A stretch of 64,000 nt of DNA from the NCBI GenBank assembly GCA_977020255.1, contig CDROCS010000122.1:124001-188000 (forward strand), given 5' to 3'. Position 1 is the stretch's first letter. Each line of letters starts with the position of its first letter. Both the position numbers and the translations under genes were made by a program. The DNA comes from Obrimoposthia wandeli. Taxonomy: Eukaryota. Under the pieces are notes generated by a model. That model saw nothing but the letters and a program-made list of their open reading frames with translations, was not told where the DNA came from and ran no database searches. This document shows positions 1,302 through 27,073 of this stretch, piece by piece.

Positions 1302-3449
1302 CTATGAATAGAAAGATTGCTCTTCATTCGCCATCGCAACCAACTTATTACACGGTGCAAAACGCTTACCGTATTTGTCTGAATGATCCTTCAGCATTTC
1401 GACTACCCTTTTAGCCCCCAACGTATCCATATAACGGAATGGACCACCAAGGAATGGCGGAAAGCCAATGCCGAAGATTGCGCCGATATCACCATCACGT
1501 GCTGATTTAATAACACCTTCATCAAGGCATCGTGCCGCTTCATTCAACATCATTAGCGTACATCGCAGCGCAATATCTTGCCCCGCAGCTTTTTGCGATG
1601 GCTCTAGAGAAAGCAGCTTATAAACACTTTTATCGACTTCTTTCTTCTTCGTATTGTATAGGTAGAATCCTTTGCCGCTCTTACGTCCTTTACGACCATC
1701 ACTCAGTAATAGATCGAACACATCAGGCGCTTTAAATCGTTCGCCTAATTCAGCCAATAATATCGGGCTGATCTTCGCACCAATATCGACACCGACTTCA
1801 TCAAGCAAGGTTATCGGCCCTACAGGGAAACCGAAATCCAATAATGAACGATCGATATGTTCGATAGGCTCACCGCTTAATAACACGGCAGCGGCTTCAT
1901 TCATATATGGCGCTAAAATGCGGTTAACATAAAAACCCGCTTTATCAGCGACAACAATGGGGGTTTTACCCTGCTTCTTCGCCAAAGCAACAACCGTTGC
2001 GATGGTTTGATCAGAGGTCGCTCCCCCATTTTCAGTGCCTTCATGGGGAATAACTTCAACCAATGGCATTTTTTCTACTGGGCTGAAATAGTGTAAACCC
2101 ACCACATTTTCAGGTCGCTCTGCTGCAGCGGCGATTTGATGAATAGGCAATGACGATGTATTACTCGCAAAAATCGTGTCATCCGATGTTTGCTGCTCAA
2201 TGTCTTTTACCATTTGGTGTTTTAAATTGATGTCTTCAAATACCGCTTCTATCACCACATCGACATTCGCGAATCCAGTGAATGTTGTTCCACCCGTAAT
2301 ACTGAACATTTGGCTTTGTAGCTCAGCTTTACTAATGATTCGGCGTTTATATTGCTTGTCGAGTAACTTGAAATTATAAACGAGGGCATTTTTAATGCCT
2401 TCATTTGATATGTCTTTAATTCGAACTGGGTAGCCGGCTTTCGTTGCCGTTACATGGCTGATACCACCACCCATTAAGCCACCACCTAGCACACCCACCT
2501 TCTTGATTGTTGCAGGTTGCGCATCAGAACCTGATTCTTTTTTCATGGCTGTTGTAGCAAAAAATATACTGCGTAAAGCGGCTGATTCAGACGTCATCAC
2601 CAGCTCACCAAAACACTTGGCTTCTTCCACTAAACCTTTCTTCATACCGTGTTGCAGACCATATTTAATCACATCTAAAATGGCATCTGCAGCAGGGTAA
2701 TTTCCGCGCGTTTTTTCATGGGTTTTCTTCGCAGCTTGATCAAAAACAACAGAACGACCCAGTGCATTACCGCCCAAAGCCCACTCTTGGAATGAGCTTT
2801 TGTGTTTTGGCTTACTTTTTAGGGCTTGTTTTTCAGCGATATCAAGCAAGATACTTAATGGCACTACTTCTTCGACAATACCCAGTTTTTTCGCTTTCTT
2901 TGCACGTAGCTGTTTGCCCGTTAGAATCATATCTAACGCATTAGCCACGCCAATTAAACGCGGTAAACGCTGTGTACCACCAGACCCTGGCAGTAAACCT
3001 AATTGTACTTCTGGCAGACCTAAGCGCGTTTTATCATCATCACTACATACTCGGCTATGACAAGCTAAAGCGAGCTCTAAGCCACCGCCTAAACAAGGGC
3101 CATGAATCGCTGCTACAACATGAAACGGCAACGCTTCTAATTGACCAAATAGCTCTTGCCCTTTTGCGGCTAATTGCTGCGCTTCATCTGCCGTTTGGCA
3201 TGCTGCCAGCATTCGAATATCTGCGCCAGCAATGAAATTATCAGGCTTGCCGGAATACACCACCATGCCTTTAACGTCTTTCTTTTCTTTCAACTGTGCC
3301 AGAACATCTGTGATTTGATCAACAAATGCAGACTGCAGCGTGTTCATTTTTTCGTTGGGTACATCAATTTTCAACCAAGCAACACCGTTATCGCCAAACG
3401 TTAGCGAGAAAGCGGAAGGTTGTGAATTTGAAGATTCATGATCTGTCAT
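1302..3449 (-). CDS. fadJ: Fatty acid oxidation complex subunit alpha (enoyl-CoA hydratase / 3-hydroxyacyl-CoA dehydrogenase)
   Basis: Crotonase motifs ([26 protein letters not shown]), NAD-binding GGGLMGGGI and [15 protein letters not shown]. Start moved to ATG 3449, which overlaps the fadI stop as TAATG. Confidence 0.95.
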
Positions 3450-4759
3450 TATTCTGCCTCCAAAATCATTGCTGCACCTAGCCCACCTGCAGCACAAGCG
3501 GTATTCAATGCAAAGCCACCGCCACGACGTTGAAGCTCTCGCAGTGTTTGCGTAATCATTCGTGCGCCTGTTGCTGCAAATGGGTGACCATAGGCTAATG
3601 AACCACCAAGCACGTTGAACTTATCCATATCAATTTCACCAATCGCTTGGCTACGACCCAGTTTTTCTTCGGCAAATTTCTTTGAACCAAACATTTTCAC
3701 ATTCGCTAATGTTTGCGCAGCAAATGCTTCATGCATATCAATCAACGTAAGATCTGACAAGCTGATACCAGCACGATCCAGTGCCATTGGCGTCGCATAA
3801 GATGGCCCCATCAGCATATCTTGCTCGACACCAATCGCTGAAAATGCATAAGAACGAATATAACCTAATGGTGTAAGACCAAGCTCTTTTGCTCGGCCTT
3901 CACGCATTAACAAAATCGCCGCTGCACCATCGGTTAATGGCGTACTATTTGCTGCCGTTACAGAACCAAATTTACGGTCAAAAGCAGGACGTAGCTTGGC
4001 ATAAGACTCTAAGGTTGAGTCTTCACGAATATTATTATCTTTATCAATCCACTGGCCATACGGTTCAGGGAAAGCCGTCATCACTTCGCCACGTATTAAA
4101 CCGTCTTTCCATGCTTTAGCCGCTAACGTGTGTGAACGGTACGCCAATGCATCTTGCTCTTGACGGGTAATGCCGTGACTTTTTGCCATTTGTTCAGCGG
4201 TTTGACCCATGCTAATACCCGTTGAATATTCAGCAACAGCAGGTGGTACAGGCATAAGATCTTTAACGCTTAATGTACTAAGTAGTTTTAAACGCTTGCT
4301 CATTGTTCGTGCTTTACTCAGCGCTAACAAGGTTGCAGCTAACTTCTTTGACACGCCAATCGGCAATACTGACGATGAATCAGCACCACCAGCAATACCA
4401 ATGTCAATCGTGCCAGAAATGATACTTTCTGCCACATTCGCGGCGGCTTGAAAGCTAGTGGCACAAGCACGTGTAACACTATAAGCATCAGTGCCTATGT
4501 TCATGCCCGTACCCAGCACTATTTCTCGTGCAATATTAGGCGCTTCAGGCATTTGAACTACTTGACCAAATACAACTTGTTCAATTAATTTAGGGTCAAA
4601 ATCGAGCTCTTGAAGCATCTCATTGACAACCATTTTCCCCATATCGAGTGCAGGCACGCCATTAAAGGCAGTAGCCTGACGAGCAAACGGGGTACGTAAT
4701 CCACTTACAACGGCGATGCGCTCACCCTGACGAGTGGTGAGGTTTTGGAGACGTGTCAT
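3449..4759 (-). CDS. fadI: 3-ketoacyl-CoA thiolase
   Basis: Thiolase motifs RACATS, HEAFAAQ and GHPFAATG; adjacent to fadJ. Confidence 0.95.
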
Positions 4760-4834
4760 CGCTACTCCTTATTAATGTTAGTTACCAGTTTAAAACTGCC
4801 GATATTGGCATGCAGAACACAAGCATATGCAATT

Positions 4835-4851
4835 TAGAGGTCAGACCACAA
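4835..4851. promoter_or_regulatory. FadR operator upstream of fadI
   Basis: TAGAGGTCAGACCACAA carries the GGTC-N-GACC core of the FadR consensus (AACTGGTCnGACCAGTT), just downstream of the predicted -10. Confidence 0.8.
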
Positions 4852-4853
4852 TA

Positions 4854-4881
4854 ATTGTAATCAAATTGTTATTAATATCAA
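4854..4881 (-). promoter_or_regulatory. sigma70 promoter of fadIJ
   Basis: Minus strand TTGATA-N16-TACAAT. Confidence 0.6.
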
Positions 4882-5110
4882 ACGAATGTTTTATTTTTGT
4901 GGAGCAGATACACTAAACATGGATCATTTATAAGATAAAATCCAAATCACCCCTCTAAAAACATATAAGATATGAATATTAGTTAAGGCAAAGAGATAAC
5001 AAAGAAATAAGTCAATACGAAGAAAGCCGATATACTGTGGAGGAATGGTTTGGGGAAGCTAAAGCAAGCTGGTACAAGTTAACATTTGCACTCTATACTT
5101 TTCTTTAGAC

Positions 5111-5138
5111 AAAAAAAAACCATACCCTAAGGTATGGT
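5111..5138 (-). terminator. Orphan intrinsic terminator on the minus strand
   Basis: Minus strand ACCATACC-TTAG-GGTATGGT followed by a T run. No annotated minus-strand gene ends here. Confidence 0.75.
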
Positions 5139-5325
5139 CACTATTGTATAGACAGTTAAAAACTATCTAATCTAAGTATTAAGTCAATCAACATAAAGCC
5201 AATTGCAAATCAGGATAAACCTGATAAGAGAAAGTAAAGTCAGCCTTCAAAAGGAAGTTGTCATCTTGCTCAACAGACGATAAACACAGAATGTAATACT
5301 GTTCCACAGAAACTACATTCGTACT
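5111..5325 (-). ncRNA. Candidate sRNA divergent from the ECF sigma gene
   Basis: Lies between an ECF-like promoter (5331-5358) and the orphan terminator and contains internal hairpins. Inferred only; no family recognised. Confidence 0.4.
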
Positions 5326-5330
5326 CATCA

Positions 5331-5358
5331 TCAGATGACAGGGACTACTATAACTTCC
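5331..5358 (-). promoter_or_regulatory. ECF/sigmaE-type promoter
   Basis: Minus strand GGAAGTT-N16-TCTGA, one mismatch from the RpoE consensus GGAACTT-N16-TCTGA. Confidence 0.45.
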
Positions 5359-5477
5359 CGCTGAAGTCAGAGTTTGAACCAGATCAATTTTATGGCTGAT
5401 TATTCATTTATTCGCGCATCCGATGAAAAAAAACGAACAATAGTCGCGATGTCGACACCAAGTTAACGGGCAAATTC

Positions 5478-6050
5478 ATGATTAAACAATTTTTCCGTAA
5501 GAAAACGCCAGATGCCACGGTCTCTGTAGATATGAATAAACAAAGACGTTATGAAGCCCTTGTCAGGGCGTGGCATCGAGACTTATACCGTTATGCATAT
5601 TGGTTATGCCATGATCCTCATATAGCAGAAGATCTGGTACAAGAAACATGCTTAAGGGCTTGGCGTTCTTTAGATAGCCTACAAGATGACAAAGCAGCGA
5701 AATCATGGTTGATTACAATTTTACGCCGGGAAAATGCACGGCGCTTTGAGCGTAAACAACTCGATCTTGTCGACATAGATGACTATGCCATTGCTGATCC
5801 CCACCAACAGGGAACAGAAATGGAAATGGAACAACAAATGTTGCACCGTCAAATTATGAAGCTCGCACCTGAATATCGTGAGCCTCTGGTTTTACAAGTT
5901 ATGGCCGGTTTTAATGGTGATGAAATTGCAAAAATATTGGGGTTAAACCGTAACACGGTGATGACGCGTTTATTTCGCGCAAGAAATCAGTTAAAAGACC
6001 AAATAGAAAAGCAATCTGAGCGGAGGGATCACCACAATGGACGATCTTGA
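5478..6050 (+). CDS. ECF-family sigma-70 factor
   Basis: Region 2 (AEDLVQETCLRAW, SWLITI) and region 4 (YREPLVLQ...EIAKILG...TVMTRLFRAR); 190 aa. Confidence 0.92.
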   Translation: MIKQFFRKKTPDATVSVDMNKQRRYEALVRAWHRDLYRYAYWLCHDPHIAEDLVQETCLRAWRSLDSLQDDKAAKSWLITILRRENARRFERKQLDLVDIDDYAIADPHQQGTEMEMEQQMLHRQIMKLAPEYREPLVLQVMAGFNGDEIAKILGLNRNTVMTRLFRARNQLKDQIEKQSERRDHHNGRS

Positions 6051-6750
6051 ATTCCGTCGTCGAATTTTGGCTGATCCAAACGATAACAGCCCAGATTTGT
6101 CGACAGCCAGAAATGAATCAATAGTCAATCGAAAGTTATACGACGAACTATTGCAATTAGATGCCCAGCTAGAAAAAACCATGAAGGTCGATGTACCCGA
6201 TGACTTAGCCGATCGCATTCTATTTCATCAATCAGGGCAACCTAACGAAAAACCCAAAAATAATCGTTTCCATATGGCTATTGCGGCATCCGTTGCGTTA
6301 GTAGTCGGCATTATGATCGGTCAGTTTAATCACTTTGCATTACCTTCTGCACAAGCTGCGGGGATTGGGCAAATTGCGCTGCAACATGTCCACACCGAAG
6401 CGCCTTTTGTTAATACTGTTGATGAGTCTGTTAGCTTGCAACAAGTAAACGCAAAATTATTACCCTTTGGCCCTAGCTTAAGCGATTTACCTGGACATGT
6501 ATCCTATGTAAACCACTGCGGGTTTGGTGACAAAAATGCATTACACATGGTAATGGATACACCGCAGGGTAAAGTCACGGTTTTCATCGTACCTGAAGTA
6601 AGCAAAACCATGACGGCATTTAACGATAAGCAAATGGATGGCATTGTGATGCCGATTAAAAATGCGAGCTTAATCGTGGTCGGTGAAAAAGGGCAAGACG
6701 TTATGCCTATTATTAAAAGCATCGAATCAGATTTACACTGGCAAATTTAA
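6037..6750 (+). CDS. DUF3379-like single-pass membrane protein, putative anti-sigma factor
   Basis: N-terminus MDDLEFRRRILADP, one TM segment (MAIAASVALVVGIMIG), overlaps the ECF stop codon. Confidence 0.75.
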   Translation: MDDLEFRRRILADPNDNSPDLSTARNESIVNRKLYDELLQLDAQLEKTMKVDVPDDLADRILFHQSGQPNEKPKNNRFHMAIAASVALVVGIMIGQFNHFALPSAQAAGIGQIALQHVHTEAPFVNTVDESVSLQQVNAKLLPFGPSLSDLPGHVSYVNHCGFGDKNALHMVMDTPQGKVTVFIVPEVSKTMTAFNDKQMDGIVMPIKNASLIVVGEKGQDVMPIIKSIESDLHWQI

Positions 6751-6793
6751 TCATCTAGTCAGCCAAAGGCTGGCTTCAAACTTTATACTGCTT

Positions 6794-6829
6794 AAAAGCC
6801 ATCATTATTTTAAATAATGATGGCTTTTT
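6794..6829 (+). terminator. Terminator of the ECF/anti-sigma operon
   Basis: AAAAGCCATCATTATTT-T-AAATAATGATGGCTTTT perfect inverted repeat. Confidence 0.75.
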
Positions 6830-6966
6830 ATTCTTATCAGTCATATCACAAGTATTTATGTTACACCTGTTGCATAATTGGCGATTACCCATCCACCACC
6901 TCACTCAATTTATGTACAATCTTCCTCGTTAAGCATTAACTAATCGATAACAATCAACAAACTAAC

Positions 6967-7006
6967 AACTGGTCAGATTTGATAGACTGGCTAACACTCT
7001 TACAAT
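6967..7006 (+). promoter_or_regulatory. FadR operator overlapping the sigma70 promoter of the first fadL
   Basis: AACTGGTCAGATTTGAT (6967-6983, left half perfect) overlaps TTGATA(6979)-N16-TACAAT(7001). Confidence 0.7.
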
Positions 7007-7067
7007 CATCCGCGATCTATCAATATAGATAGACATGCAGTGTAAATGATTAGGAATAATAATAAAT

Positions 7068-8294
7068 ATGAACAAGAAGCGTCTGTTTACTAAAACGATG
7101 ATTGCTGCAGCAATCACACTAACATCTCAGCAAGCCCTTGCTGCTGGTTTCCAAGTTAACGCACAATCAGCAACCGGCCTGGGTCGCGCATTTGCTGGTG
7201 ACGCCGTTATTGCTGATAACGCATCAGTAATGTCACGTAACGCCGCGGCAATGTCTTTATTCGATGCACCATCACTATCGTTAGGTATTAACGTTATTGA
7301 TTCAGATATCGATGTTAAAGATGCAACATACACCAATGGATTTACTGGTGTTTCTTCATTAGAAGATCAATCAACTGGTGCTTCATCTTTAGTACCAAAC
7401 TTTTATTATATTCATCCAATTAATGACCAGTGGGCTGTTGGTGCTAGCATCTATTCAAACTTTGGTACCAAAACTGAATTTAGTAGCGACTACCCTGCAA
7501 ATGAATATGGCGGTTTAACCGACGTTAAAAGCATGAACTTTGGTTTAAGTGCTTCATACCGTATTAACCAGCAATGGAGTGTCGGTGCTGGTTTAGACAT
7601 CGTCTACGGCGAAGGTAAGCTTCAACGAAATGATCCAATACTTGAACAGAAATTCGGTGGAAAAGTATTAGATGTTGATGCAGACGGTGTTGGCTTTGGC
7701 TGGAATATTGGTACAGTATTTGAGCTAGATGACCGCAACCGTTTCGGTCTATCATACCGCTATAGCCCTGAGCTAGAAACTGAAGGTGATATGACTTATG
7801 GTGGACAAGATATTAGCTCTCAAAAATTGCTAATGCCTTTACCTGATATGGCTGAATTTTCTGGTTTCCACAAGCTAAACGATCTATTTGCCGTTCACTA
7901 CAGCGTACAGTGGATTGGCTGGAGTGCATTCGACAAGTTAGCAACCGACGGTGGTGTTACACTTAATGACTACGAATGGCAAGACGGCTGGCACTATGCG
8001 TTAGGTGGTACTTACTACCTAAACAATGATTGGACACTACGTGCTGGTTACATGTACGACACCAGCGCACAAGATCAAAAAACATCGATATCTGTACCAG
8101 ATTCCGATCGTCAATGGTTCTCAGGTGGCTTTACCTATCACCTAGATGCCAAATCTAACATTGATTTCGGTCTAACTTATCTAGTAGGGCAAGATGTAGA
8201 TGTTAAAGAGAGTACTCCTGGCTACTCAAGCATCACAGCTACAACTCACGCAAACGCATTACTATACGGTATTCAGTACAGCCGTTCGTTCTAA
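7068..8294 (+). CDS. fadL: Long-chain fatty acid outer membrane transporter, copy 1
   Basis: Signal peptide, AGFQV...SATGLGRAFAG hatch motif, NAA motif, C-terminal Phe. Confidence 0.9.
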   Translation: MNKKRLFTKTMIAAAITLTSQQALAAGFQVNAQSATGLGRAFAGDAVIADNASVMSRNAAAMSLFDAPSLSLGINVIDSDIDVKDATYTNGFTGVSSLEDQSTGASSLVPNFYYIHPINDQWAVGASIYSNFGTKTEFSSDYPANEYGGLTDVKSMNFGLSASYRINQQWSVGAGLDIVYGEGKLQRNDPILEQKFGGKVLDVDADGVGFGWNIGTVFELDDRNRFGLSYRYSPELETEGDMTYGGQDISSQKLLMPLPDMAEFSGFHKLNDLFAVHYSVQWIGWSAFDKLATDGGVTLNDYEWQDGWHYALGGTYYLNNDWTLRAGYMYDTSAQDQKTSISVPDSDRQWFSGGFTYHLDAKSNIDFGLTYLVGQDVDVKESTPGYSSITATTHANALLYGIQYSRSF

Positions 8295-8650: not shown

Positions 8651-9871
8651 ATGAATAAGAATAAAATAACATTATCTTTAGCAGCAGCGTTAATACTGGG
8701 CATGAGTGCCAATACAATGGCGGCTGGTTTTCAACTTGCAGAATATTCAGCAACAGGCTTAGGCCGTGCGTTTGCTGGTGAAGCTGCAATGGCAGACAAT
8801 GCTGGCGCACAATTTCGCAACCCAGCAATGCTGACGTACCTTGAAGGTACACAAGTATCAATGGGTGCTATTTATGTCGATCCAAATATCGATGTTGATG
8901 GGTCAGTCAATGGTACACAAACAAAAGCCAGCGATATTGCAAACTCAGCCGTTATCCCTAACTTCTATTTATCCCACCAGCTTAACGACAAAGTCTTCCT
9001 GGGTTTAGCGTTCGGTACGAACTACGGCATGGAAACGGAACTAGCGGGTGATTACCAAGCTACACAGTTTGGTAATCAAGCAAAAGTAATGTCGATTGAA
9101 ATTAACCCTAACATTGCTTACAAAATTAATGAGCAGTTTAGTGTGGGTGGTGGTATTCGTTACGTTATAGGTGAAGGTCACTTTGGTGCCGCATTACCGA
9201 ACAACGGACCTGACCTTAAGTACATGGAAGGTGATGATACATCGTGGGGCTGGCAACTAGGTACAGCATGGCAAATCAATGAGAATAACCGTATTGGTTT
9301 CAACTACCGTTCTGAAGTTGAACTAAACCTTAGTGGTAGTGCTTCAGGTCTGGTTTACGGTGGTAAAACACAGCCTGGTAGTATGGATTTGACACTTCCA
9401 GCAACCGCTGAATTAGCAAGCTTCCACCAGCTAACAGACAAAGTAGCAGTACACGCTAGCTTTAACTGGACAGATTGGAGCAGCTTTGAAAAATTGGAAG
9501 CAAATATCCCGTCTTACTCTTCGTCTCCCGATCTGATTAAAGAAGAAAACTGGGAAGATAATTACCGTTTAGCAGTGGGTACAACTTACCAATACACGAA
9601 CAAGCTCGTGCTGCGCTCAGGTATTGCTTACGATACATCAGCAGTAAGTGATGAGCACCGTACACAAACGATTCCAGAAACTGACCGTCTATGGTTAAGT
9701 GTGGGTGCTGGTTATAACTGGTCACAAAACCTAACACTTGATGCAGGCTTGACTTACATCTTTGCCAAAGATGCACCAATGAACGAAGTGGACCCAAGCC
9801 TTGGACAATTTAAAGGTGAAACCACTGGTAACATATGGCTTGTTGGTATACAAGCAAGCTACCGCTTCTAA
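8651..9871 (+). CDS. fadL: FadL/OmpP1-family outer membrane transporter, copy 2
   Basis: AGFQLAEYSATGLGRAFAGE motif, NPA motif, C-terminal YRF. Confidence 0.9.
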   Translation: MNKNKITLSLAAALILGMSANTMAAGFQLAEYSATGLGRAFAGEAAMADNAGAQFRNPAMLTYLEGTQVSMGAIYVDPNIDVDGSVNGTQTKASDIANSAVIPNFYLSHQLNDKVFLGLAFGTNYGMETELAGDYQATQFGNQAKVMSIEINPNIAYKINEQFSVGGGIRYVIGEGHFGAALPNNGPDLKYMEGDDTSWGWQLGTAWQINENNRIGFNYRSEVELNLSGSASGLVYGGKTQPGSMDLTLPATAELASFHQLTDKVAVHASFNWTDWSSFEKLEANIPSYSSSPDLIKEENWEDNYRLAVGTTYQYTNKLVLRSGIAYDTSAVSDEHRTQTIPETDRLWLSVGAGYNWSQNLTLDAGLTYIFAKDAPMNEVDPSLGQFKGETTGNIWLVGIQASYRF

Positions 9872-10874: not shown

Positions 10875-12143
10875 TTAATATTGTTTATTTATTGTCACAA
10901 TAGTAGAAGTACCTAACGATAATACATCACTTTGTCCGTACCAATCACCTTGCTTTGTCATCACATTTCCATCTGAATCGATTCGTGCTTTCACAATCAT
11001 TTCAGATAAAGACGACATCTTACGCTCTGGAATCATACTGTCTTTATCATCTAACGTTACCGTTATAGGGAACTGAGATGAAAGCGGTATACGACGAGCC
11101 GCAATCGGCATAGGTGCGCCATCTGCAGAATGAACTGAAAGAATAAGGAAACCTTGTGCCGGTAATAAGACAGCAGGATCGAGCGTAACATTAACCGTTA
11201 CACTGTCAGCTGGAACATCAACTACACTCACTTTATCAGTTACACTATCAGCTGAAACATCTACCGTACTCACTTTATCAATACGTGATTGTGCGCGCTC
11301 AATACTACGAGTCAACATATTTGCGCGCGGGTCATTCTCTCCAATGACATTCTTCATCATGGTCCAGTATGACACTGCCTGCTGGTACTCATTTCGCTCA
11401 AAAGCATCAAAGGCGAGTAATGACAATGCACGAACATCGCTTGGGTCGTACTTCACGACTGAACGCAGTATCTGGCGAGCAAAGTCACCTTGGTTAGGAT
11501 CACCAACCAACATAAGCGTTTGCGCGTAGCCTACCTTAATTTCAGGGTTGCTAGGATCAAGCTTATAAGCACGAAGCATTGCACCTTGCGACGTTTCAGC
11601 ATCACGGTTCGCCATGCCAATACGCCCCAGTAATAGCCAACCAGTCGCATCATTTGGGGTATCGTGCAAACGAGTACGCAAAGCCAGTGTTAAGTCATCC
11701 ATTTCTTGATCACTTAACGGTTCTGCATTTTGATCATCCATTAAACGCTTTGACAGGTCGGGTAAACGCGATACCGTCTCTTGCCAAGCTTCAACTTTAT
11801 TCAAGCTGCCCACGCTTAAGTACATGCCGTAACAGATGCCCACAAGTAAAATCAGACCAGGCAGCACCATTAATGGGCTAATTCCAACAGCTTGTTGTTT
11901 CGCCTGCAAAGGTACATCATCAAGTAATGACTGTTGCAGTTCAGAAACCAGTTCATCTTGATTAACAACCAAGCCTTCACTGTTTTCTTCCTCTAGCTCG
12001 CTAATACGATCTTTAAAGAAAGCTTTATTCAGTTCATCGCGGCTAGCTACATCGTCTTGTTCTTTCCCTTTGTACATAGGAATAACAAAAATAGCGCCTG
12101 CAATTAAAACCAAAATAACTGTTACAATCCAAAACAGTGTCAT
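10875..12143 (-). CDS. ccmI: Cytochrome c maturation TPR protein CcmI
   Basis: Two TM segments, TPR region (GWLLLGRIG, YAQTL, AVSYW), last gene of the ccm operon. Confidence 0.9.
   Translation of the reverse strand: MTLFWIVTVILVLIAGAIFVIPMYKGKEQDDVASRDELNKAFFKDRISELEEENSEGLVVNQDELVSELQQSLLDDVPLQAKQQAVGISPLMVLPGLILLVGICYGMYLSVGSLNKVEAWQETVSRLPDLSKRLMDDQNAEPLSDQEMDDLTLALRTRLHDTPNDATGWLLLGRIGMANRDAETSQGAMLRAYKLDPSNPEIKVGYAQTLMLVGDPNQGDFARQILRSVVKYDPSDVRALSLLAFDAFERNEYQQAVSYWTMMKNVIGENDPRANMLTRSIERAQSRIDKVSTVDVSADSVTDKVSVVDVPADSVTVNVTLDPAVLLPAQGFLILSVHSADGAPMPIAARRIPLSSQFPITVTLDDKDSMIPERKMSSLSEMIVKARIDSDGNVMTKQGDWYGQSDVLSLGTSTIVTINKQY
11197..11280. repeat. 42 bp in-frame tandem duplication in ccmI
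   Basis: Encodes DKVSTVDVSADSVT / DKVSVVDVPADSVT. Confidence 0.85.
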
Positions 12144-12667
12144 GATTTCACCTTACCGTTTTTATTCTGAGGGTGTTGCTCCGCTTTTTCTTGCTGTTCT
12201 ATCTCATTTAATAATTCTTTGAGACGTACTTCTTCATCTGCAGCCAGCTTAATTTTACTCTTCGCATCTTCAGTCTTACGTGAGCGAACAACTAACACAG
12301 TGAAACCAACAAGGATGAATAAGAAAGGCCCCATCCACAGAACTAAGGTAGAAGCCATCAACGGTGGATCATAGGTTACGAAGTTACCGTAACGTGCAAT
12401 CATGTAGTCAATGATTTCTTGTTTACTCTTGCCTTCTTCTAACATTTCAAACACTTTCTGGCGCATATCTTGCGCCAATGTTGCATTAGAATCGGCAATC
12501 GTATTGTTCTGGCACTTAGGGCAACGAAGAGTTGCTGTCAGATCTTGAAACGTTTTCTCTTCCTTAGCACTGTCAAACTTATAAACATCAATAGATGCTA
12601 AAGCAGGTAGTGCTGAAATAACGATTAAGCCAAAAGCAAAAAACATGGCAATCACACGTTTCATCAT
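12140..12667 (-). CDS. ccmH: Cytochrome c biogenesis protein CcmH
   Basis: LRCPKCQN motif and RYGNFV. Confidence 0.93.
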   Translation of the reverse strand: MMKRVIAMFFAFGLIVISALPALASIDVYKFDSAKEEKTFQDLTATLRCPKCQNNTIADSNATLAQDMRQKVFEMLEEGKSKQEIIDYMIARYGNFVTYDPPLMASTLVLWMGPFLFILVGFTVLVVRSRKTEDAKSKIKLAADEEVRLKELLNEIEQQEKAEQHPQNKNGKVKS

Positions 12668-13218
12668 CCTTTTGCTTCCTCTTGAAGTGCTTTGAACATT
12701 GGTTCTAATGTTTCAGCCCAGTTTCGCGGGTTTACATCACCAACATGACGATAACGAACAATACCTTTAGCATCGATAAGGAACGTTTCTGGTGCACCGT
12801 ATACACCTAAATCCATTCCTAACATACCGTTACCATCGAACAAGCTATGAATATAAGGGTTACCTAACTCATTAAGCCATTGAACGGCCTTTAGACGTTC
12901 GTCTTTGTAGTTCAAGCCAATAATCTTAACGCCTTGACCTGCTAATTCATTAAGGTATTTATGCTCGGCATAACAAGTAGGACACCACGTTGCCCATACA
13001 TTCAACAGTAGTGGTTCACCTTTAAAAATGTCTTGCTCGTAAAGTTTACCCGCTTCTACCAAGTCTTCTAGTTTAAAGTTTGGTACAGGTTTACCCACTA
13101 GCACAGATTCTAGTTTTGTCGGATCGTCACCATCGGCATTACGTGTAAGTTGAATAATGAAAACAACAGCTAACGCTAAAAACAACGCCAAAGGTATAAA
13201 TAAAATTTTCTTATTCAT
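12664..13218 (-). CDS. dsbE: Thiol:disulfide oxidoreductase CcmG/DsbE
   Basis: WATWCPTC and GVYGAPETF. Confidence 0.95.
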   Translation of the reverse strand: MNKKILFIPLALFLALAVVFIIQLTRNADGDDPTKLESVLVGKPVPNFKLEDLVEAGKLYEQDIFKGEPLLLNVWATWCPTCYAEHKYLNELAGQGVKIIGLNYKDERLKAVQWLNELGNPYIHSLFDGNGMLGMDLGVYGAPETFLIDAKGIVRYRHVGDVNPRNWAETLEPMFKALQEEAKG

Positions 13219-15199
13219 TCGTTACCTCTGCTTGCTTAGCTGTTGACCCTGTTTTCTCACTCGCTTTTTTACGAAAACGGTAGCGCTTATCACTGATTGC
13301 AATTGCACCACCAAGCCCCATTAATGCGGCACCAAACCAGATCCAATTAATAAACGGTTTGTAGTAAATACGCACAGCCCAAGCGTGATCATCCAGTTTC
13401 TCACCCATCGCAACATACAGGTCGCGGGTAACACCACTATCAATCGCCGCTTCAGTCATCATTGACCCAGTAGTACTGTAGAAGCGTTTCTCAGCATGTA
13501 ATGTCGTTACCGACTTACCATTACGCGTAACAGTGAAGTCTGCAATGTAACCATCGTAGTTTGGTCCATCGGCATCACGTAAGCCGTCAAAGTAGAAATC
13601 GTAACCTTGAACTTGCGTTGTTTCACCAGGTGCTAAACGAACATCACGTTCTAGATCGTAATTCGAGACTAATGTTATACCGATAACCGATACCGCTAGA
13701 CCCATATGGCCCAATATCATTGCCCAATGACTGCGACCCAGTTTACCGACCCCCTTCAGGAAGGTATGGCGGTGCGTTGCACGTTGATATAACTCAAAAC
13801 CGTGCATTGTGACGATCCAAATAGACATTGTTAAACCAAGTACAGCCATTGGTTCTAGTGAATCAGTAAAAATGGCAATACATGCAAAGGCTAAAGGTAA
13901 CGTTATTGCACCAGAAATCAGCATTGGTTTACGTACATTAGCGACTTCGTCGCGCTTCCAACGAACCAACGGACCAATACCTAAAAGAAAGGCAAACGGA
14001 ATCATTAACCATGTAAACAAAGTATTAAAGAAAGGCACACCAATAGAGACTGAACCTAAACCAATTTGCTTGTGCACTAATGGTAGTAATGTACCGATAA
14101 GTACCACTAACAATGCTGCTATTAACAAAATGTTATTTGAAAGCAGTAAGTTTTCACGGGAGAACAAACTGTAACTACCGCGTGATTTAATTTTGCCGCC
14201 TCGTAAAGCGTACAGTAGTAATGAACCACCAATAACAACGATCAAAAAGCCTAGAATAAACATGCCACGAGCCGGATCTGACGCAAAAGCGTGAACCGAG
14301 ACTAAAACACCAGAACGAACTAAGAACGTACCTAATAAGCTTAAAGAGAAAGCTGAAATAGCTAATAAAACGGTCCACGCTTTAAACGTGCCACGTTTCT
14401 CGGTAACCGCTAATGAGTGCATTAACGCTGTACCCGCCAACCAAGGCATGAAAGATGCGTTTTCTACTGGATCCCAGAACCACCAGCCACCCCAGCCAAG
14501 TTCATAGTAAGCCCACCACGAACCTAGCGCGATACCTACGGTTAAAAATGACCATGCTGCAATTGTCCAAGGGCGAGACCAACGCGCCCATGCAGTATCA
14601 AGACGACCAGTCATTAATGAAGCAATAGCAAAAGAGAAGGCAACAGAGAAACCCACGTATCCCATGTAAAGCATAGGAGGGTGAATAATCAAACCAGGAT
14701 CTTGCAGAAGAGGGTTAAGATCGCGACCATCGACAGGGAAATAAGGCAGCGTACGTAAAAATGGGTTAGAGGTAACAATGATAAACAGTAGGAAACCCAC
14801 TGAAATCATACCCATAATAGCCAAAACACGCGCTACAGATTCGAGAGGCATATCGCGGCTAAAGCGCGCAACCGCTGCAGCCCAACCAGCTTGAATCAAC
14901 ACCCATAATAGAAGAGAACCTTCGTGCCCACCCCATACGGCCGTAACTCGGTAATACCAAGGCAACAAGCTGTTTGAATTACTCGCGACATATGTCACCG
15001 TAAAATCATTCGTATAGAAAGACCAGCACAAGGCAAAAAACGACAATACCAGCATGCCGAAAGCACCGTATGACAGCGGTCGTGCCATACGCATCATTGG
15101 CTGGTTACCAATAGAGGCCCCATACAATGGATAGATGCTGGCCAAAGCTGATAGCCCCAACGCAACAATAAGGGCAAATTGCCCTATTTCAGGAATCAT
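13211..15199 (-). CDS. ccmF: Heme lyase CcmF
   Basis: WGGHEGS, HPPMLY and [12 protein letters not shown]. Confidence 0.97.
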
Positions 15200-15681
15200 T
15201 GAACCTTACCTTGTGTTTGTTCATCTGAGTATTGAAGAGGCTCATGCGTCTTCTTCATCGCTTCAGCAATTTCAGGAGGCATATATTCTTCATCGTGTTT
15301 TGCTAACACTTCATGCGCTTCAATCGTTGTAGGGTTAACCAACACACCTTGAGCAACAATGCCCTGCCCTTCACGGAATAGATCAGGCAAAATACCGTTA
15401 TAGGTAATTGTGACAGCTGGACCGACATCAGCAACATCAAATCTAACGATTAATGACTGAGGGTCACGCTTTACAGACCCTTCAACCACCATACCGCCAA
15501 TTCGTAATCGTTGACCGACCTCTGGCTTAGTACCGTCTGGTTTACCCTGCACTAACTCTGTTGGTGTATAAAATAAATCCATATTTTGGCTTAATGCGTA
15601 AAGCATTAGACCAATGGTTGAGCCAAGGCCAAAGACAAGCGCTACAGCTAACGTCAGGCGCTTTTTACGTCTAGGATTCAT
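15196..15681 (-). CDS. ccmE: Heme chaperone CcmE
   Basis: [10 protein letters not shown] and VLAKHDEEY. Confidence 0.97.
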
Positions 15682-15884
15682 AATGTATTCTCCAATTTTT
15701 TCGCTTCTTCAATTCGTTGTTCTCGAGCCATTTTATTATGTATATCCGCCATTAGGCGCTTTCTTCTATTTAGGCTCGACAATAAAACCCATAGTAATGC
15801 GACAGTTGAAATTCCGTATGCACTCCATACATAGGGCGCATACCCTCCCATCGCTAAAAAATCACTGAATGATTCAAAATGCAT
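15678..15884 (-). CDS. ccmD: Heme exporter protein D
   Basis: [13 protein letters not shown]; small membrane protein between ccmC and ccmE. Confidence 0.92.
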
Positions 15885-15891
15885 ATTGGCC

Positions 15892-16623
15892 TCACTTCAC
15901 TAAGTTACGTACCCAAGGTCGATGACTTTCACGGGCAATAATTTCATTACGTAGACGTACTAACGTCACAGCACCAAAGAAACATCCGAAACCAATCACA
16001 TTGATCAGTAAAGGCCAGAGCATGCTGGAATCCATTGATGGCTTATCAAATTTACTAATCGTTGCACCTTGGTGCAGTGTATTCCACCACTCAACCGAGT
16101 AGTGAATAATCGGTAGGTTAATCACGCCGACAATCGCTAAAATACCCGCCGCTTTAGCCGCTGTTTTTTGATCATCAAACGCACTATAAAGCGCAATAAC
16201 ACCAAGATATAAGAAAAGAAGAATGAGTTCTGATGTTAAACGTGCATCCCATACCCACCAAGCACCCCACATAGGTTTACCCCAGATAGCGCCAGTTAAT
16301 AAGGCTATAAAAGTAAAAACAGCGCCAATAGGCGCCATAGCTGCAGCAGCCATATCAGACATCTTCACTTGCCATACCAGACCAATAAATGCAGCAATGG
16401 CCATTGATAAATATGCCCCCATCGACAACATTGCAGCAGGTACATGTAAGTAGATGATACGGAAACTATCACCTTGCTGATAATCCGTCGGTGCGAACAT
16501 TAACCCCCATATAGACCCTATAATCAGGGAAGAAAAGGCTATGATAGAAAACCATGGTAATAGCTTGCCGCATAAACGGTAGCAATTTTCAGCTTTAGCG
16601 TAGGGATGTAACCACTTCCACAT
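15892..16623 (-). CDS. ccmC: Heme exporter protein C
   Basis: WGKPMWGAWWVWDARLT and IHYSVEWWNTLHQ. Confidence 0.97.
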   Translation of the reverse strand: MWKWLHPYAKAENCYRLCGKLLPWFSIIAFSSLIIGSIWGLMFAPTDYQQGDSFRIIYLHVPAAMLSMGAYLSMAIAAFIGLVWQVKMSDMAAAAMAPIGAVFTFIALLTGAIWGKPMWGAWWVWDARLTSELILLFLYLGVIALYSAFDDQKTAAKAAGILAIVGVINLPIIHYSVEWWNTLHQGATISKFDKPSMDSSMLWPLLINVIGFGCFFGAVTLVRLRNEIIARESHRPWVRNLVK

Positions 16624-16788
16624 AAGTCCACTCTATTCAGTTTATAGTTGTAAGTACGTTGAAATCTAGACGCATTTTTCATGCTGAGGGCCAAAAGATA
16701 AATACCTCTGTTTGGGTATTTATACTTCTGATTCATCATTCATTGTCTTTGCTCAATAAATGGTTCTCCCTCATAAATTCAATATTTG

Positions 16789-17457
16789 CTAGTTCACACT
16801 TATACGCAAAGATGCCGCGACTGCAAAAGGAGATAACGTTGCCGAACCAACCAACATTGCCCCCATTAACGCGAGTTGTCCATTATATGGCATACCTAAA
16901 CTTGCTGCTTCAATCGCTGAGGTTGCAAAAATAAGTACGGGTATATAGAGCGGTAAGATCAGAAGGCTCAATAAAACACCACCTTTTCTCAAACCAACCG
17001 TTAGTGCTACACCAATGGCACCTAAAAAGCTCAATGTGGGTGTACCAATAAGTAATGTCAGTACGACCGCTTTCCAAGTCACCCAATCTAACGACAATAA
17101 AATCGCTAACAGTGGGCTAATAATCAATAAAGGCACACCCGTTAATAACCAATGCGCGATCATTTTTGCTAACGCTAATGCGGGTAAAGGCGTAGGCATT
17201 AGTAACATTTGCTCTAGCGAACCGTCGACAAAATCATCACGAAATAAACGCTCTAGCGATAACAATGCCGCCAGTAATGCAGCAACCCATACGATGCCTG
17301 GCGCAATACGCGCTAATAAATTAGGCTCTGGACCAACGCTTAACGGAAATAGCGTAATAACGATGATGAAGAACCACAGTGGGTTGAATACGTCAGCTTG
17401 ACGACGAAACGCGATAAGTAATTCACGTCGTACCACTTGAGTAATAGCTTTTATCAT
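16789..17457 (-). CDS. ccmB: Heme exporter permease B
   Basis: LFRDDFVDGSLEQ and LPLYIPVLIF. Confidence 0.96.
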   Translation of the reverse strand: MIKAITQVVRRELLIAFRRQADVFNPLWFFIIVITLFPLSVGPEPNLLARIAPGIVWVAALLAALLSLERLFRDDFVDGSLEQMLLMPTPLPALALAKMIAHWLLTGVPLLIISPLLAILLSLDWVTWKAVVLTLLIGTPTLSFLGAIGVALTVGLRKGGVLLSLLILPLYIPVLIFATSAIEAASLGMPYNGQLALMGAMLVGSATLSPFAVAASLRISVN

Positions 17458-17462
17458 CCTTG

Positions 17463-18113
17463 TTACTGCCCTAGCTTGATTTTTCGTAAATGGTTGCTGT
17501 CTGCAAACATGTCTTGGTGTGTAGTGAGTAAAACAATACCCCCTCGTTCTACATGAGAAAGAAACAGGCTTTCTAACACTTTTACACCTTGTTTATCAAT
17601 GGCAGTAAGGGGTTCATCAAGAATCCATAACTTATGGTTACTAATCCATAACCTTGCAAGTGCAACACGCCGTTGTTGCCCCGCAGATAATTGCCCAGCA
17701 AGCACATCTTCACGCCCAGCAAGACCGACTTGTGCTAGCGCCAGCCATAAGCTTTCATCACCAAGCACGGGGGGCGTTCCACTCATGTCTTGGTCAATAC
17801 TTTCATTATGCATGGCTTGAAAGAATGCTAAATTTTCGTAAGCTGTCAGCTCGCGCTTCACACCGGTTTGGTGCCCTAAAAATAACAAGTCTTGATAATA
17901 ATCTTCACGAGCAGACTCAATATTTTCACTTTTCCAGCATACCTGCCCACTATCAGCACGCCCTAAGCCAGCAATAATTCTTAATAAGGTCGTTTTACCG
18001 GCACCGTTGTGACCTTCGACCTGAATGAGTTCTCCAGAAGAAATCGTAAAACTCAAATTATCAAATAATACTCGTTCATCGCGAACACAACTTAGCTTTT
18101 CTACTGACAGCAT
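17463..18113 (-). CDS. ccmA: Heme exporter ATP-binding protein A
   Basis: Walker [17 protein letters not shown] and LDEP. Confidence 0.96.
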
Positions 18114-26350: not shown

Positions 26351-27073
26351 TTAAGCAGTCCAAGCGGTTAGCTTAGTGCGCAAACGTTGCATAGCCTGAC
26401 TATGAATCTGGCAAATTCGGGATTCACTCACCCCAACAACGGCTCCAATCTCTTTAAGATTAAGTTCTTCGTCATAATAAAGAGATAGAACCAATGTCTC
26501 TCTTTCAGGGAGCGTTTCAATGGCATCAGCCAAAGACTGACGGAAATTATCATCTACAACACCCTGAAAGGGAAGATTTTCTTCTCGTGACGCCTCGGTT
26601 GTCACTGCATCTTCTGATACGCCAAGATCATCCATGCCAACAAGACGCCCACAATTAACATCATTTAATGCTTGATGGTACTGATCGAGCGTCATTTCGA
26701 GATGTTCAGCAATTTCTGTATCTGTAGGGTCGCGACCTAACTTATTTTCAAGCTGTGCCATGGCCTCGGTAATGCGTCGGTTATTCTTATATACAGATCG
26801 AGGAACCCAGTCACCGCGACGAATATCATCCAGCATGGCTCCTCGAATACGAATACCCGCAAAGGTTTCAAAACTCGCCCCTTTGGTTGGGTCATAATTC
26901 TGCTGTGCTTCTAGCAAACCAATCATACCTGATTGAATCAAGTCTTCGACTTGTACGCTAGAGGGAAGCCTTCCCATCAGATGATACGCAATGCGTTTAA
27001 CCAGCGACGAATAGCGCTCGATAAATGCTTGCGGGCTTTCCTTATATTGCCCATAAGCAAGCGCTTTATTCAC
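26351..27073 (-). CDS. fliA: Flagellar sigma factor sigma28
   Basis: EDLIQSGMIGL, RIRGAMLDDIR and ESRICQIHSQA. Confidence 0.97.
   Translation of the reverse strand: MNKALAYGQYKESPQAFIERYSSLVKRIAYHLMGRLPSSVQVEDLIQSGMIGLLEAQQNYDPTKGASFETFAGIRIRGAMLDDIRRGDWVPRSVYKNNRRITEAMAQLENKLGRDPTDTEIAEHLEMTLDQYHQALNDVNCGRLVGMDDLGVSEDAVTTEASREENLPFQGVVDDNFRQSLADAIETLPERETLVLSLYYDEELNLKEIGAVVGVSESRICQIHSQAMQRLRTKLTAWTA

What the first reader, a model, noticed from the sequence alone, without database searches (positions are those of the whole stretch)
5111..6829. Candidate ECF sigma / anti-sigma / divergent sRNA module inside the fatty-acid uptake and degradation locus
Seen: a strong minus-strand terminator at 5111-5138 that no annotated gene uses. 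About 190-215 nt upstream on the same strand is GGAAGTT-N16-TCTGA (5358-5331), one base from the RpoE consensus. Head-to-head with it are an ECF sigma gene and an overlapping single-TM DUF3379-like gene. The module sits between FadR-controlled fadIJ and two fadL porins. Established: sigmaE-type factors often act through sRNAs that silence outer-membrane protein mRNAs (MicA and RybB in E. coli; VrrA and MicV in Vibrio). Inference: this ECF drives a ~215 nt sRNA, possibly tuning FadL or envelope lipid genes in response to a periplasmic signal. I do not recognise the RNA as a known family.
Basis: partly seen in the sequence, partly recalled or inferred. Interest (0 to 1): 0.7.

Follow-up and report, generated by a model that had tools for sequence, protein, structure and literature searches.

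The report
Photobacterium copy of sRNA Vcr043
The unannotated terminator belongs to a real 229-nt small RNA, the Photobacterium counterpart of the Vibrio cholerae Hfq-binding sRNA Vcr043. Its conserved promoter looks oxygen-sensor (FNR) dependent, not driven by the neighbouring ECF sigma factor.

Summary
The intergenic region does encode a minus-strand small RNA that ends at the 5111 terminator.

It is not a new RNA. It is the ortholog of V. cholerae Vcr043, an Hfq-binding, RNase E-processed sRNA between VC1045 (sigma) and VC1046 (fadI). The published Northern probe matches window 5238-5259 at 21 of 22 bases, and synteny holds across six Vibrionaceae genera.

The proposed RpoE/ECF promoter fails:
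- Its -35 (GGAAGTT) lies in a 21-nt stretch that varies freely. It has 2-5 mismatches to GGAACTT in every other species, and none keeps AAC.
- Its -10 (TCTGA) lies inside the RNA, in a 5' stem (GUCAUCU:AGAUGAC) kept in 17 of 17 sequences, with compensatory changes in Salinivibrio.

All 27 sequences examined instead share TTGAT-N4-TTCAA, exactly 21 variable nt, TA(T/A)AGT, 6-7 nt, then GTCAT. This is the layout of a sigma-70 promoter with no -35 and an FNR-type activator site centred at -41.5 (inferred, not tested). The start is near 5339 and the RNA is 229 nt.

The validated V. cholerae targets (sdhC, grxA, vc0036, vc1051, rpoS) fit an FnrS-like role. Nothing links the sRNA to fadL. The family is known; the FNR link is a new, testable prediction.

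The parts
5111..5339 (-). The small RNA itself, the Vcr043 ortholog: 229 nt from the conserved G at 5339 to the end of the T run. The true start may be 0-2 nt upstream.
   Evidence: Found by nhmmer in all genera and as a single copy in the window. Probe match. Lengths are 211-247 nt in Photobacterium, 155-160 nt in Vibrio, and 160 nt in V. cholerae against ~160 nt published.
5374..5387 (-). TTGAT-CTGG-TTCAA, an FNR-type inverted repeat centred 41.5 nt upstream of G 5339.
   Evidence: Both half-sites are identical in 27 of 27 sequences. Only the two middle bases of N4 vary. The box sits a fixed 21 nt from the -10.
5353..5373 (-). 21-nt spacer of free sequence but fixed length.
   Evidence: Per-column identity falls to 30-70% here. 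GGAACTT mismatches are 2-5 in all other sequences.
5347..5352 (-). -10 hexamer TATAGT, with a conserved G two bases upstream at 5354 (position -14/-15, extended -10-like).
   Evidence: Invariant apart from TAAAGT in Salinivibrio.
5333..5339 (-). 5' arm of stem P1 (GUCAUCU).
   Evidence: Pairs with AGAUGAC in 17 of 17 sequences, with two compensatory pairs in Salinivibrio. The next 7 pairs covary within Photobacterium.
5276..5332 (-). Variable long hairpin P2 enclosed by P1. It is ~40 nt longer in Photobacterium than in Vibrio.
   Evidence: Each ortholog folds to a hairpin here although the sequences are unrelated.
5260..5275 (-). Invariant 9-nt bulge UGUUGAGCA (5267-5275) followed by the 3' arm of P1, AGAUGAC (5260-5266).
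5226..5259 (-). Mostly unpaired, invariant C/U-rich stretch (ACUUCCUUUUGAAGGCUGACUUUACUUUCUCUU). These are candidate seed regions complementary to ribosome-binding sites.
   Evidence: Invariant in Photobacterium and nearly so in five other genera. The published Vcr043 Northern probe matches 5238-5259 at 21 of 22 bases.
5149..5225 (-). Three 3' hairpins: AUCAGG..CCUGAU, CAAUUGGC..GUUGAUUG, and a variable one.
   Evidence: helix 3: 92.6% of cells paired.
5111..5139 (-). Intrinsic terminator: stem 5139-5118, T run 5119-5111.
   Evidence: The stem has 5 pairs with changes on both sides across genera.
5478..6050 (+). ECF-type sigma factor gene (ortholog of VC1045), divergent from the sRNA.
6037..6750 (+). 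DUF3379 gene, a putative membrane anti-sigma factor (N-terminal helical domain, TM segment, periplasmic domain).
6794..6828 (+). Terminator that closes the sigma/DUF3379 operon ahead of fadL1.
   Evidence: A hairpin plus T run at the same place is visible by eye in the other genera.
4838..4881 (-). fadIJ promoter (TTGATA-16-TACAAT, 4881-4854) with a FadR-type operator (GTGGTCTGACCTC). It lies downstream of the sRNA terminator and is not part of the sRNA.

Best explanation
Window 5339-5111 (minus strand) encodes the Photobacterium ortholog of V. cholerae Vcr043, a trans-acting, Hfq-dependent small RNA.

Shown here:
- Orthology, by probe and primer matches and by synteny.
- Conserved secondary structure.
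- A conserved promoter layout.

Taken from the V. cholerae literature:
- Hfq binding and RNase E processing.
- Repression of sdhC, grxA, vc0036 and vc1051.
- Activation of rpoS.

Inferred: the RNA is made by sigma-70 RNA polymerase from a promoter that has a good -10 (TATAGT, with a G two bases upstream) but no -35. In place of the -35 sits an FNR-type dimer site (TTGAT-N4-TTCAA) centred at -41.5, the standard class II activator position. On this reading the RNA is switched on when oxygen is low. It then uses its invariant unpaired C/U-rich stretches and the UGUUGAGCA bulge to pair with ribosome-binding regions of mRNAs for aerobic and redox functions. That would make it a working counterpart of enterobacterial FnrS.

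The neighbouring ECF sigma factor does not drive it. The two genes share only a compact divergent control region.
For: Identity with Vcr043:
- Probe AGTCAGCCTTCAAAAGGAAGTG (PMC8545128 supplement) matches window 5238-5259 at 21 of 22 bases and exactly in three Vibrio loci.
- In the V. cholerae locus L027 the reverse cloning primer is exact just past the terminator.
- The 17 sRNA-specific bases of the forward primer start 2 nt before GTCATC.
- The V. cholerae RNA measures 160 nt against ~160 nt published.
- Gene order fadJ-fadI / sRNA / sigma-DUF3379-fadL holds in Photobacterium, Grimontia, Enterovibrio, Thaumasiovibrio, Salinivibrio and Vibrio.

Structure:
- 96.7% of cells paired.
- 9 pairs changed on both sides against 2.5 in shuffles (0 of 500 shuffles reach this).
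- Slid controls give 22-45% paired.

Promoter:
- 27 of 27 sequences have box, 21 nt, -10, 6-7 nt, then G.
- The hexamer at the -35 position averages AAAATC, so there is no -35.
- The box keeps its distance to the sRNA while its distance to the sigma start codon ranges from ~97 to ~350 nt.
- Both half-sites carry TTGA. T rather than G at this position is what separates FNR sites from CRP sites (established knowledge).
- E. coli fnrS has TTGAG-N4-GTCAA centred at -42.5 from its annotated start.

Function:
- GFP-reporter repression of sdhC (~5-fold), vc1051 (~180-fold), vc0036 (~2-fold) and grxA (~1.7-fold) by Vcr043.
- The authors note an electron-transport theme among these targets.
Against: - No experiment links this promoter to FNR. 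I found no paper that does.
- Vcr043 is readily detected in V. cholerae grown in LB, at similar levels in all growth phases. It is also among the most abundant RIL-seq partners. That is more than expected for a strictly FNR-dependent promoter.
- A single TTGAT-N4-WTCAA match per 64 kb is what chance gives (1.02 expected). The case therefore rests entirely on conservation and spacing.
- One half-site is TTCAA rather than ATCAA.
- If the start is 2 nt upstream of the G, as the V. cholerae primer suggests, the site centre is -39.5.
- Targets have not been tested in Photobacterium.
Confidence: 0.6

Rival explanations
1. One reading: the neighbouring ECF sigma factor (or RpoE) transcribes a ~215-nt sRNA from GGAAGTT-N16-TCTGA, starting near 5325, as with MicA, RybB, VrrA and MicV.
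For: - The motif is present and is one mismatch from a sigmaE-type consensus.
- The sRNA and the ECF gene are neighbours in every Vibrionaceae genus examined.
Against: - The -35 heptamer has 2-5 mismatches in all 19 other distinct sequences, and none, including the window, has the AAC core.
- A match this good is expected 0.2 times per window.
- TCTGA lies in the 5' arm of stem P1, and the bases just downstream covary with their partners. They are therefore transcribed.
- The V. cholerae sRNA was cloned from a 5' end upstream of this element.
- Under this model the invariant TATAGT would sit in a promoter spacer with no role.
Confidence: 0.03
2. Same sRNA, different control. The conserved inverted repeat could be bound by CRP or another regulator. 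Or it could serve mainly the divergent sigma-gene promoter, as a -35 (TTGAAC on the plus strand) or an operator. The sRNA promoter would then run constitutively on its extended -10-like element.
For: - Vcr043 is abundant in aerobic LB cultures at all growth phases.
- On the plus strand, TTGAAC followed 17-18 nt later by GATTAT or GATTA is partly conserved (read by eye from the sequences).
- Han and Lory report the VC1045 and Vcr043 starts only 25 bp apart, with overlapping promoters.
- CRP also uses class II sites at -41.5 (established knowledge).
Against: - Both half-sites keep T, never G, at the position that separates FNR sites from CRP sites, in 27 of 27 sequences.
- The box tracks the sRNA at a fixed distance, not the sigma gene.
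- The lack of any -35 hexamer argues for dependence on an activator.
Confidence: 0.3
3. The transcript is an mRNA for a small protein (the 47-aa ORF at 5331-5188) or a dual-function RNA.
For: An ATG-started 47-codon ORF lies within the transcript.
Against: - The ORF exists only in the P. profundum group. Elsewhere the start codon is absent and indels break the frame.
- The longest ORFs in Vibrio orthologs are 9-14 codons and in other frames.
- The core is invariant at all three codon positions.
- No Pfam or NCBIfam match.
Confidence: 0.03
4. The conserved block is a leader or cis-regulatory element of fadIJ, read through into the operon, rather than an independent trans-acting RNA.
For: It has the same orientation as fadIJ and lies immediately upstream.
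Against: - A strong conserved terminator (9 bp plus T9) ends it 350 nt before fadI.
- fadIJ has its own conserved promoter and FadR-type operator downstream of that terminator.
- In V. cholerae the RNA is a discrete ~160-nt Hfq-bound species with trans targets.
Confidence: 0.03

Closest known systems
Vcr043 of Vibrio cholerae (found by dRNA-seq, Papenfort et al. 2015; studied in PMC8545128, PMC9732341, PMC7398697)
   Same: - Same position and orientation, between fadI (VC1046) and the divergent sigma gene (VC1045).
- Same promoter layout, 5' stem, invariant core and terminator.
- The published probe and primers match.
   Different: - The Photobacterium RNA is 229 nt against 160 nt. It has a much longer P2 hairpin and one extra 3' hairpin.
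- Hfq binding, processing and targets are known only for V. cholerae.
FnrS of Escherichia coli (Rfam RF01796)
   Same: - Promoter with an FNR site at the class II position: -42.5 in E. coli by the annotated start, -41.5 here.
- A 5' stem-loop followed by an unpaired C/U-rich stretch containing ACUUCCUUUU(UU)GAA.
- Reported V. cholerae targets are in respiration and redox, as for FnrS.
   Different: - No detectable homology. There is no Rfam hit at E up to 10 and no nhmmer hit on fnrS.
- The local alignment covers only 10-15 nt and is no better than shuffles for the window (63 of 500) and V. aestuarianus (37 of 500) copies. It is borderline for Grimontia (7 of 500).
- Different genomic context.
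- Vcr043 also activates rpoS, which FnrS is not known to do.
SigmaE-dependent sRNAs (MicA and RybB in E. coli; VrrA and MicV in Vibrio)
   Same: Intergenic, terminator-ended, Hfq-type sRNAs. This one lies next to an ECF sigma gene.
   Different: There is no conserved sigmaE-type promoter. Known V. cholerae targets are not outer-membrane proteins.
ArcZ of enterobacteria
   Same: Oxygen-linked, RNase E-processed and an activator of rpoS. The eLife authors themselves compare Vcr043 processing with ArcZ and RprA.
   Different: ArcZ is repressed by ArcA under anaerobiosis, and no ArcA-type repeats were recognised here. There is no sequence similarity (no Rfam hit).

Membership tests
Vcr043 sRNA family (Vibrionaceae) | Located between fadI and the divergent ECF-type sigma gene, transcribed away from the sigma gene | tested here: met
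.
Vcr043 sRNA family (Vibrionaceae) | Sequence identity with the published V. cholerae RNA (probe and primers) | tested here: met
   Probe matches 21 of 22 bases at 5238-5259. Probe and primers are exact, or exact in their specific part, in Vibrio and V. cholerae loci. The profile search gives E 4.4e-49 in the window.
Vcr043 sRNA family (Vibrionaceae) | Shared secondary structure with covariation | tested here: met
Vcr043 sRNA family (Vibrionaceae) | Hfq binding, RNase E processing and trans regulation of sdhC, grxA, vc0036, vc1051 and rpoS | not testable with these tools
   Known only from V. cholerae experiments.
SigmaE/ECF-dependent sRNA | Conserved GGAAC-type -35 and TC-type -10 at the right distance from the start | tested here: not met
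   The -35 is not conserved in any of 19 other sequences and the AAC core is never present. The proposed -10 lies inside the RNA stem.
FNR-activated class II promoter | TTGAT-N4-ATCAA-like inverted repeat centred near -41.5, a -10 hexamer and a weak or absent -35 | tested here: met
   TTGAT-N4-TTCAA (9 of 10 bases) at -41.5 or -40.5 from the conserved G in 27 of 27 sequences, TATAGT as -10, no -35.
FNR-activated class II promoter | FNR binding and oxygen-dependent expression | not testable with these tools
   No data were found. Aerobic abundance in V. cholerae is a caveat.
FnrS (Rfam RF01796) | Match to the family covariance model or sequence homology | tested here: not met
   No hit at E up to 10. 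nhmmer and local alignment are negative apart from a 10-15 nt shared motif.
ECF (group 4) sigma factor | Regions 2 and 4 only, and a match to ECF models | tested here: met
   Sigma70_r2 plus r4_2 with no r3. TIGR02937 scores 78.9 bits against 42.9; PRK12517 scores 332 against 197.
Membrane anti-sigma factor (RseA/RsiW type) | Gene coupled to the sigma gene; N-terminal helical anti-sigma domain, one TM segment and an extracytoplasmic sensor domain | tested here: inconclusive
   - The genes overlap by 14 nt.
- The N-terminal model has four helices.
- Its only three PDB fold matches are RsiW and RseA, but they are weak (E 1.1-4.6, TM 0.5).
- The C-terminal domain's best coherent matches are RseB and MucB (E 0.014-0.044).
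- There is no sequence-level match to any solved structure.

The most novel reading that the evidence does not exclude
Vcr043 would be the Vibrionaceae equivalent of FnrS, switched on by FNR at low oxygen. Its promoter is also interlocked back-to-back with that of the ECF sigma/anti-sigma operon: the -10 boxes overlap on opposite strands, and the FNR site falls just downstream of the sigma-gene start. FNR binding would then toggle the locus between making the sRNA and making an ECF system whose anti-sigma factor combines RseA-like and RseB-like (lipid-sensing) parts in one protein. That would tie oxygen supply to fatty-acid uptake and envelope signalling.
Probability: 0.25. Interest if true: 0.6.

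Novelty: new member of a known kind. Interest (0 to 1): 0.35.

Why it matters
The sRNA is real but is a family already found in V. cholerae, and the ECF promoter is a chance look-alike.
- The comparison adds something the papers I could search do not report. The RNA occurs in at least six Vibrionaceae genera, has a defined structure, and carries an invariant FNR-type class II promoter.
- Vcr043 is described in those papers as uncharacterised with respect to its own regulation. Its validated targets point to electron transport.
- An FNR link would give it a physiological role (an anaerobic switch, like FnrS). It would also explain why it activates rpoS and represses sdhC. The link can be tested with one mutant and one Northern blot.

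Tried and rejected
- **Rfam.** Searches at permissive thresholds on 4700-7100 and on 5095-5350 gave only chance-level hits.
- **Small-protein reading.** The ORF is not conserved.
- **FadR at the conserved box.** The true FadR-type operators at fadIJ and fadL1 read TGGTC(T/A)GAC. The box matches them poorly, judged by eye.
- **Autoregulated ECF promoter.** I looked upstream of the sigma gene and upstream of fadL1. The regex scan upstream of the sigma gene found no conserved GAAC...CGT-type motif. Reading the fadL1 upstream sequences by eye found none either. fadL1 has a sigma-70 promoter with a FadR-type operator and is separated from DUF3379 by a terminator.
- **Homology to E. coli FnrS.** Rejected; only a 10-15 nt shared motif.
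- **Pairing scan against 58 start regions in the window.** This crude duplex energy gave no support for fadL, fadI or the sigma gene as targets. The top hit, fliA, could not be checked in other species and is absent from the held part of the RIL-seq table.
- **Papers not held.** The Papenfort 2015 and Durand and Storz 2010 papers are not in the library. The exact dRNA-seq start and the published FnrS promoter description could not be read, so the FnrS geometry was taken from the RefSeq annotation instead.
- **Covariance model.** None was built; nhmmer and the pair counts answered the question.
Full report
**What is in the sequence**

The window comes from a Photobacterium of the profundum group. 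The DUF3379 protein is 97% identical to those of P. profundum, P. frigidiphilum and P. indicum.

The gene order is:
- fadJ 1302-3497 (-)
- fadI 3449-4759 (-)
- a 718-nt intergenic region
- an ECF-type sigma gene 5478-6050 (+)
- a DUF3379 gene 6037-6750 (+), overlapping the sigma gene by 14 nt
- a terminator at 6794-6828
- two fadL genes (7068-8294 and 8651-9871, +)
- mlaA and the ccm genes

The minus-strand terminator is real: stem 5139-5118, then nine T at 5119-5111. The letters GGAAGTT-N16-TCTGA are at 5358-5331 as stated. However, a match that close to the sigmaE-type pattern is expected 0.20 times per 64 kb and appears in 20 of 100 shuffles.

**A conserved non-coding element**

In ten Photobacterium genomes the stretch 5091-5440 is 75-84% identical at DNA level. 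This holds even where the DUF3379 protein next door is only 53-56% identical. An alignment shows four features:
- a core of about 100 nt that is almost invariant
- an invariant terminator stem with a variable loop
- a variable 5' part with indels
- three invariant blocks upstream

A profile of this alignment finds the element at the same place, between fadI and the divergent sigma gene, in Grimontia, Enterovibrio, Thaumasiovibrio and three Vibrio species. It finds it weakly in Salinivibrio and also in seven metagenome contigs. The window holds a single copy. Rfam has no family for it.

**It is Vcr043**

Han and Lory (PMC8545128) place the V. cholerae sRNA Vcr043 between VC1045 (a sigma factor) and VC1046, transcribed opposite to VC1045, at about 160 nt.

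- Their Northern probe matches window 5238-5259 at 21 of 22 bases, with no match in shuffles. It matches exactly in three Vibrio loci.
- I fetched a V. cholerae locus (L027). Their reverse cloning primer is exact just beyond the terminator.
- The 17 specific bases of their forward primer begin 2 nt before the conserved GTCATC.
- The RNA from that G to the end of the T run is 160 nt.
- The RIL-seq coordinates, 1114589/93 to 1114750, agree.

The window RNA is therefore the Photobacterium ortholog of Vcr043. It is 229 nt (5339-5111) because hairpin P2 is longer and there is one more 3' hairpin.

**Why the ECF/RpoE promoter fails**

There are two independent reasons.

1. The -35. It has 2 mismatches in its closest relatives and 3-5 elsewhere, and none contains AAC.
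2. The -10. TCTGA sits in the 5' arm of a stem. GUCAUCU pairs with AGAUGAC in 17 of 17 sequences, and Salinivibrio keeps the stem through two compensatory pairs. The seven pairs that follow covary within Photobacterium (AU to GC and similar). Bases that covary with a partner in the RNA must be transcribed, so the start lies upstream of them, as in V. cholerae.

For the structure as a whole, 96.7% of cells pair. Nine pairs show changes on both sides against 2.5 in shuffles (0 of 500 reach this), and sliding the partners drops pairing to 22-45%.

**What the promoter looks like instead**

All 27 sequences share the same layout:
- TTGAT-N4-TTCAA
- exactly 21 nt of unconstrained sequence
- TATAGT (TAAAGT in Salinivibrio), with a conserved G two bases upstream
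- 6-7 nt
- then GTCAT

The hexamer at the -35 position averages AAAATC, so there is no -35. The inverted repeat is centred 41.5 nt (40.5 in five sequences) upstream of the conserved G. Only the two middle bases of N4 vary, as expected for a site read by a dimer through its two half-sites.

The box keeps this distance to the sRNA. Its distance to the sigma start codon runs from about 97 nt here to about 350 nt in Grimontia and Enterovibrio, so the box belongs to the sRNA.

From established knowledge of the CRP/FNR family, TTGAT-N4-ATCAA is the FNR consensus. T rather than G before the GA is what separates FNR sites from CRP sites, and -41.5 is the class II activator position. E. coli fnrS, read from RefSeq, has TTGAG-N4-GTCAA centred at -42.5 from its annotated start.

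This is inference from sequence only. One such box per window is what chance gives, so the argument rests on conservation and spacing.

**How it probably works**

Low oxygen activates FNR. FNR binds at 5374-5387 and recruits sigma-70 polymerase to TATAGT. A 229-nt RNA is made, ending at the terminator.

The RNA has these parts:
- a closed 5' domain (P1, plus a species-specific P2)
- an invariant 9-nt bulge, UGUUGAGCA
- an invariant, mostly unpaired stretch, ACUUCCUUUUGAAGGCUGACUUUACUUUCUC, whose C/U runs are complementary to ribosome-binding sites
- two or three hairpins and the terminator

In V. cholerae the RNA binds Hfq and is cut by RNase E into stable forms. It represses reporter fusions of sdhC, vc1051, vc0036 and grxA, and activates rpoS about 3-fold. 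Repressing succinate dehydrogenase and redox genes when oxygen is scarce is what FnrS does in E. coli.

The two RNAs share the motif ACUUCCUUUU(UU)GAA but nothing else that can be detected. I therefore call them analogues, not relatives.

**Caveat**

Vcr043 is easily seen in LB cultures at all growth phases. Control by FNR may be partial, or another regulator may use the site. I give the FNR step roughly even odds or a little better, and the identity with Vcr043 near certainty.

**The ECF module**

- The sigma factor is a clear ECF type. Han and Lory's reference to VC1045 as the housekeeping sigma-70 looks like a misreading of the annotation.
- A model of the DUF3379 protein (pLDDT 79) has three parts: an N-terminal four-helix domain, a poorly modelled linker containing the hydrophobic segment, and a confident C-terminal helix-plus-sheet domain.
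- Modelled alone, the N-terminal domain has only three fold matches in the PDB: two chains of the anti-sigma factor RsiW (5wuq) and RseA (1or7). All are weak (E 1.1-4.6, TM about 0.5).
- For the whole model, ranks 2-11 are all RseB or MucB, also weak (E 0.014-0.044).
- This fits a membrane anti-sigma factor with an RseB-like, possibly lipid-binding, sensor domain. It does not prove it.
- I found no conserved ECF-type promoter upstream of the sigma gene or of fadL1. fadL1 and fadIJ have sigma-70 promoters with FadR-type operators. The regulon of this ECF factor remains unknown.
- Han and Lory report the VC1045 and Vcr043 starts 25 bp apart. On the plus strand the complement of the sRNA's -10 reads TACTATAAC, which could serve as the sigma gene's -10, and the FNR box would then lie just downstream of that start. 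A toggle between the two genes is possible but untested.

**No link to fadL found**

In a crude duplex scan of the sRNA core against 58 start regions in the window, fadL1 and fadL2 rank last, fadI ranks 54th and the sigma gene 49th. The held part of the V. cholerae RIL-seq table has no Vcr043 chimeras with VC1042-VC1046, and there fadL (VC1043) pairs with FarS. That table was cut when stored, so this is weak negative evidence.

**Verdict**

The proposed ECF/RpoE mechanism is not supported. The new and testable point is the invariant FNR-type class II promoter.

Noticed in passing
window 6037-6750: The DUF3379 protein models as three parts: an N-terminal four-helix domain, a TM linker and a confident periplasmic domain. 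The N-terminal domain's only PDB fold matches are the anti-sigma factors RsiW and RseA. The periplasmic domain's best coherent matches are RseB and MucB, the lipid/LPS-sensing partners of RseA and MucA. All scores are weak. It may be an RseA-plus-RseB-like sensor in one chain, next to fadL and mlaA.
   Followed up: partly
window 6960-7006 and 4838-4881: The fadL1 and fadIJ promoters are sigma-70 type (TTGATA-16-TACAAT in both). Each has a conserved FadR-type operator: AACTGGTCAGATTTGAT at fadL1 and GTGGTCTGACCTC at fadIJ. A terminator separates DUF3379 from fadL1 in all genera, so fadL is not simply part of the ECF operon.
   Followed up: partly
window 5346-5354 (+): The complement of the sRNA's -10 region reads TACTATAAC on the plus strand. 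It could be the -10 of the divergent sigma gene. This would fit the 25-bp distance between the two transcription starts reported for V. cholerae and would put the FNR-type box just downstream of the sigma-gene start.
   Followed up: no
window 26351-27073 (fliA) start region: The best predicted duplex of the sRNA core with any of 58 start regions in the window is with fliA, the flagellar sigma-28 gene. The energy is -39.5 kcal/mol against a mean of -24.3 (sd 4.6). The measure is crude. fliA is absent from the held part of the V. cholerae RIL-seq table, and conservation could not be checked.
   Followed up: partly
window 5226-5259 (-) and L026 5130-5251: The sRNA and E. coli FnrS share ACUUCCUUUU(UU)GAA in their unpaired regions. 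Both also have an FNR-type site at the class II position, yet there is no other detectable similarity. This may be convergence on an anti-ribosome-binding-site seed.
   Followed up: yes
window 5188-5331 (-): A 47-codon ATG-started ORF lies inside the sRNA, but it exists only in the P. profundum group. It is most likely a by-product of the expanded P2 hairpin.
   Followed up: yes
window 10875-18113 and 19163-63779: The rest of the window is mostly on the minus strand. It holds the ccm cytochrome c maturation genes (CcmI and CcmH confirmed), then a large polar-flagellum and chemotaxis cluster. Confirmed genes there are cheA, cheZ, fliA, flhG, flhF, flhA, fliJ, fliG and fliD.
   Followed up: partly
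literature, PMC8545128: VC1045 is discussed there as the housekeeping sigma-70. Its orthologs here have only regions 2 and 4 and match ECF models, so it is an ECF-type factor.
   Followed up: yes
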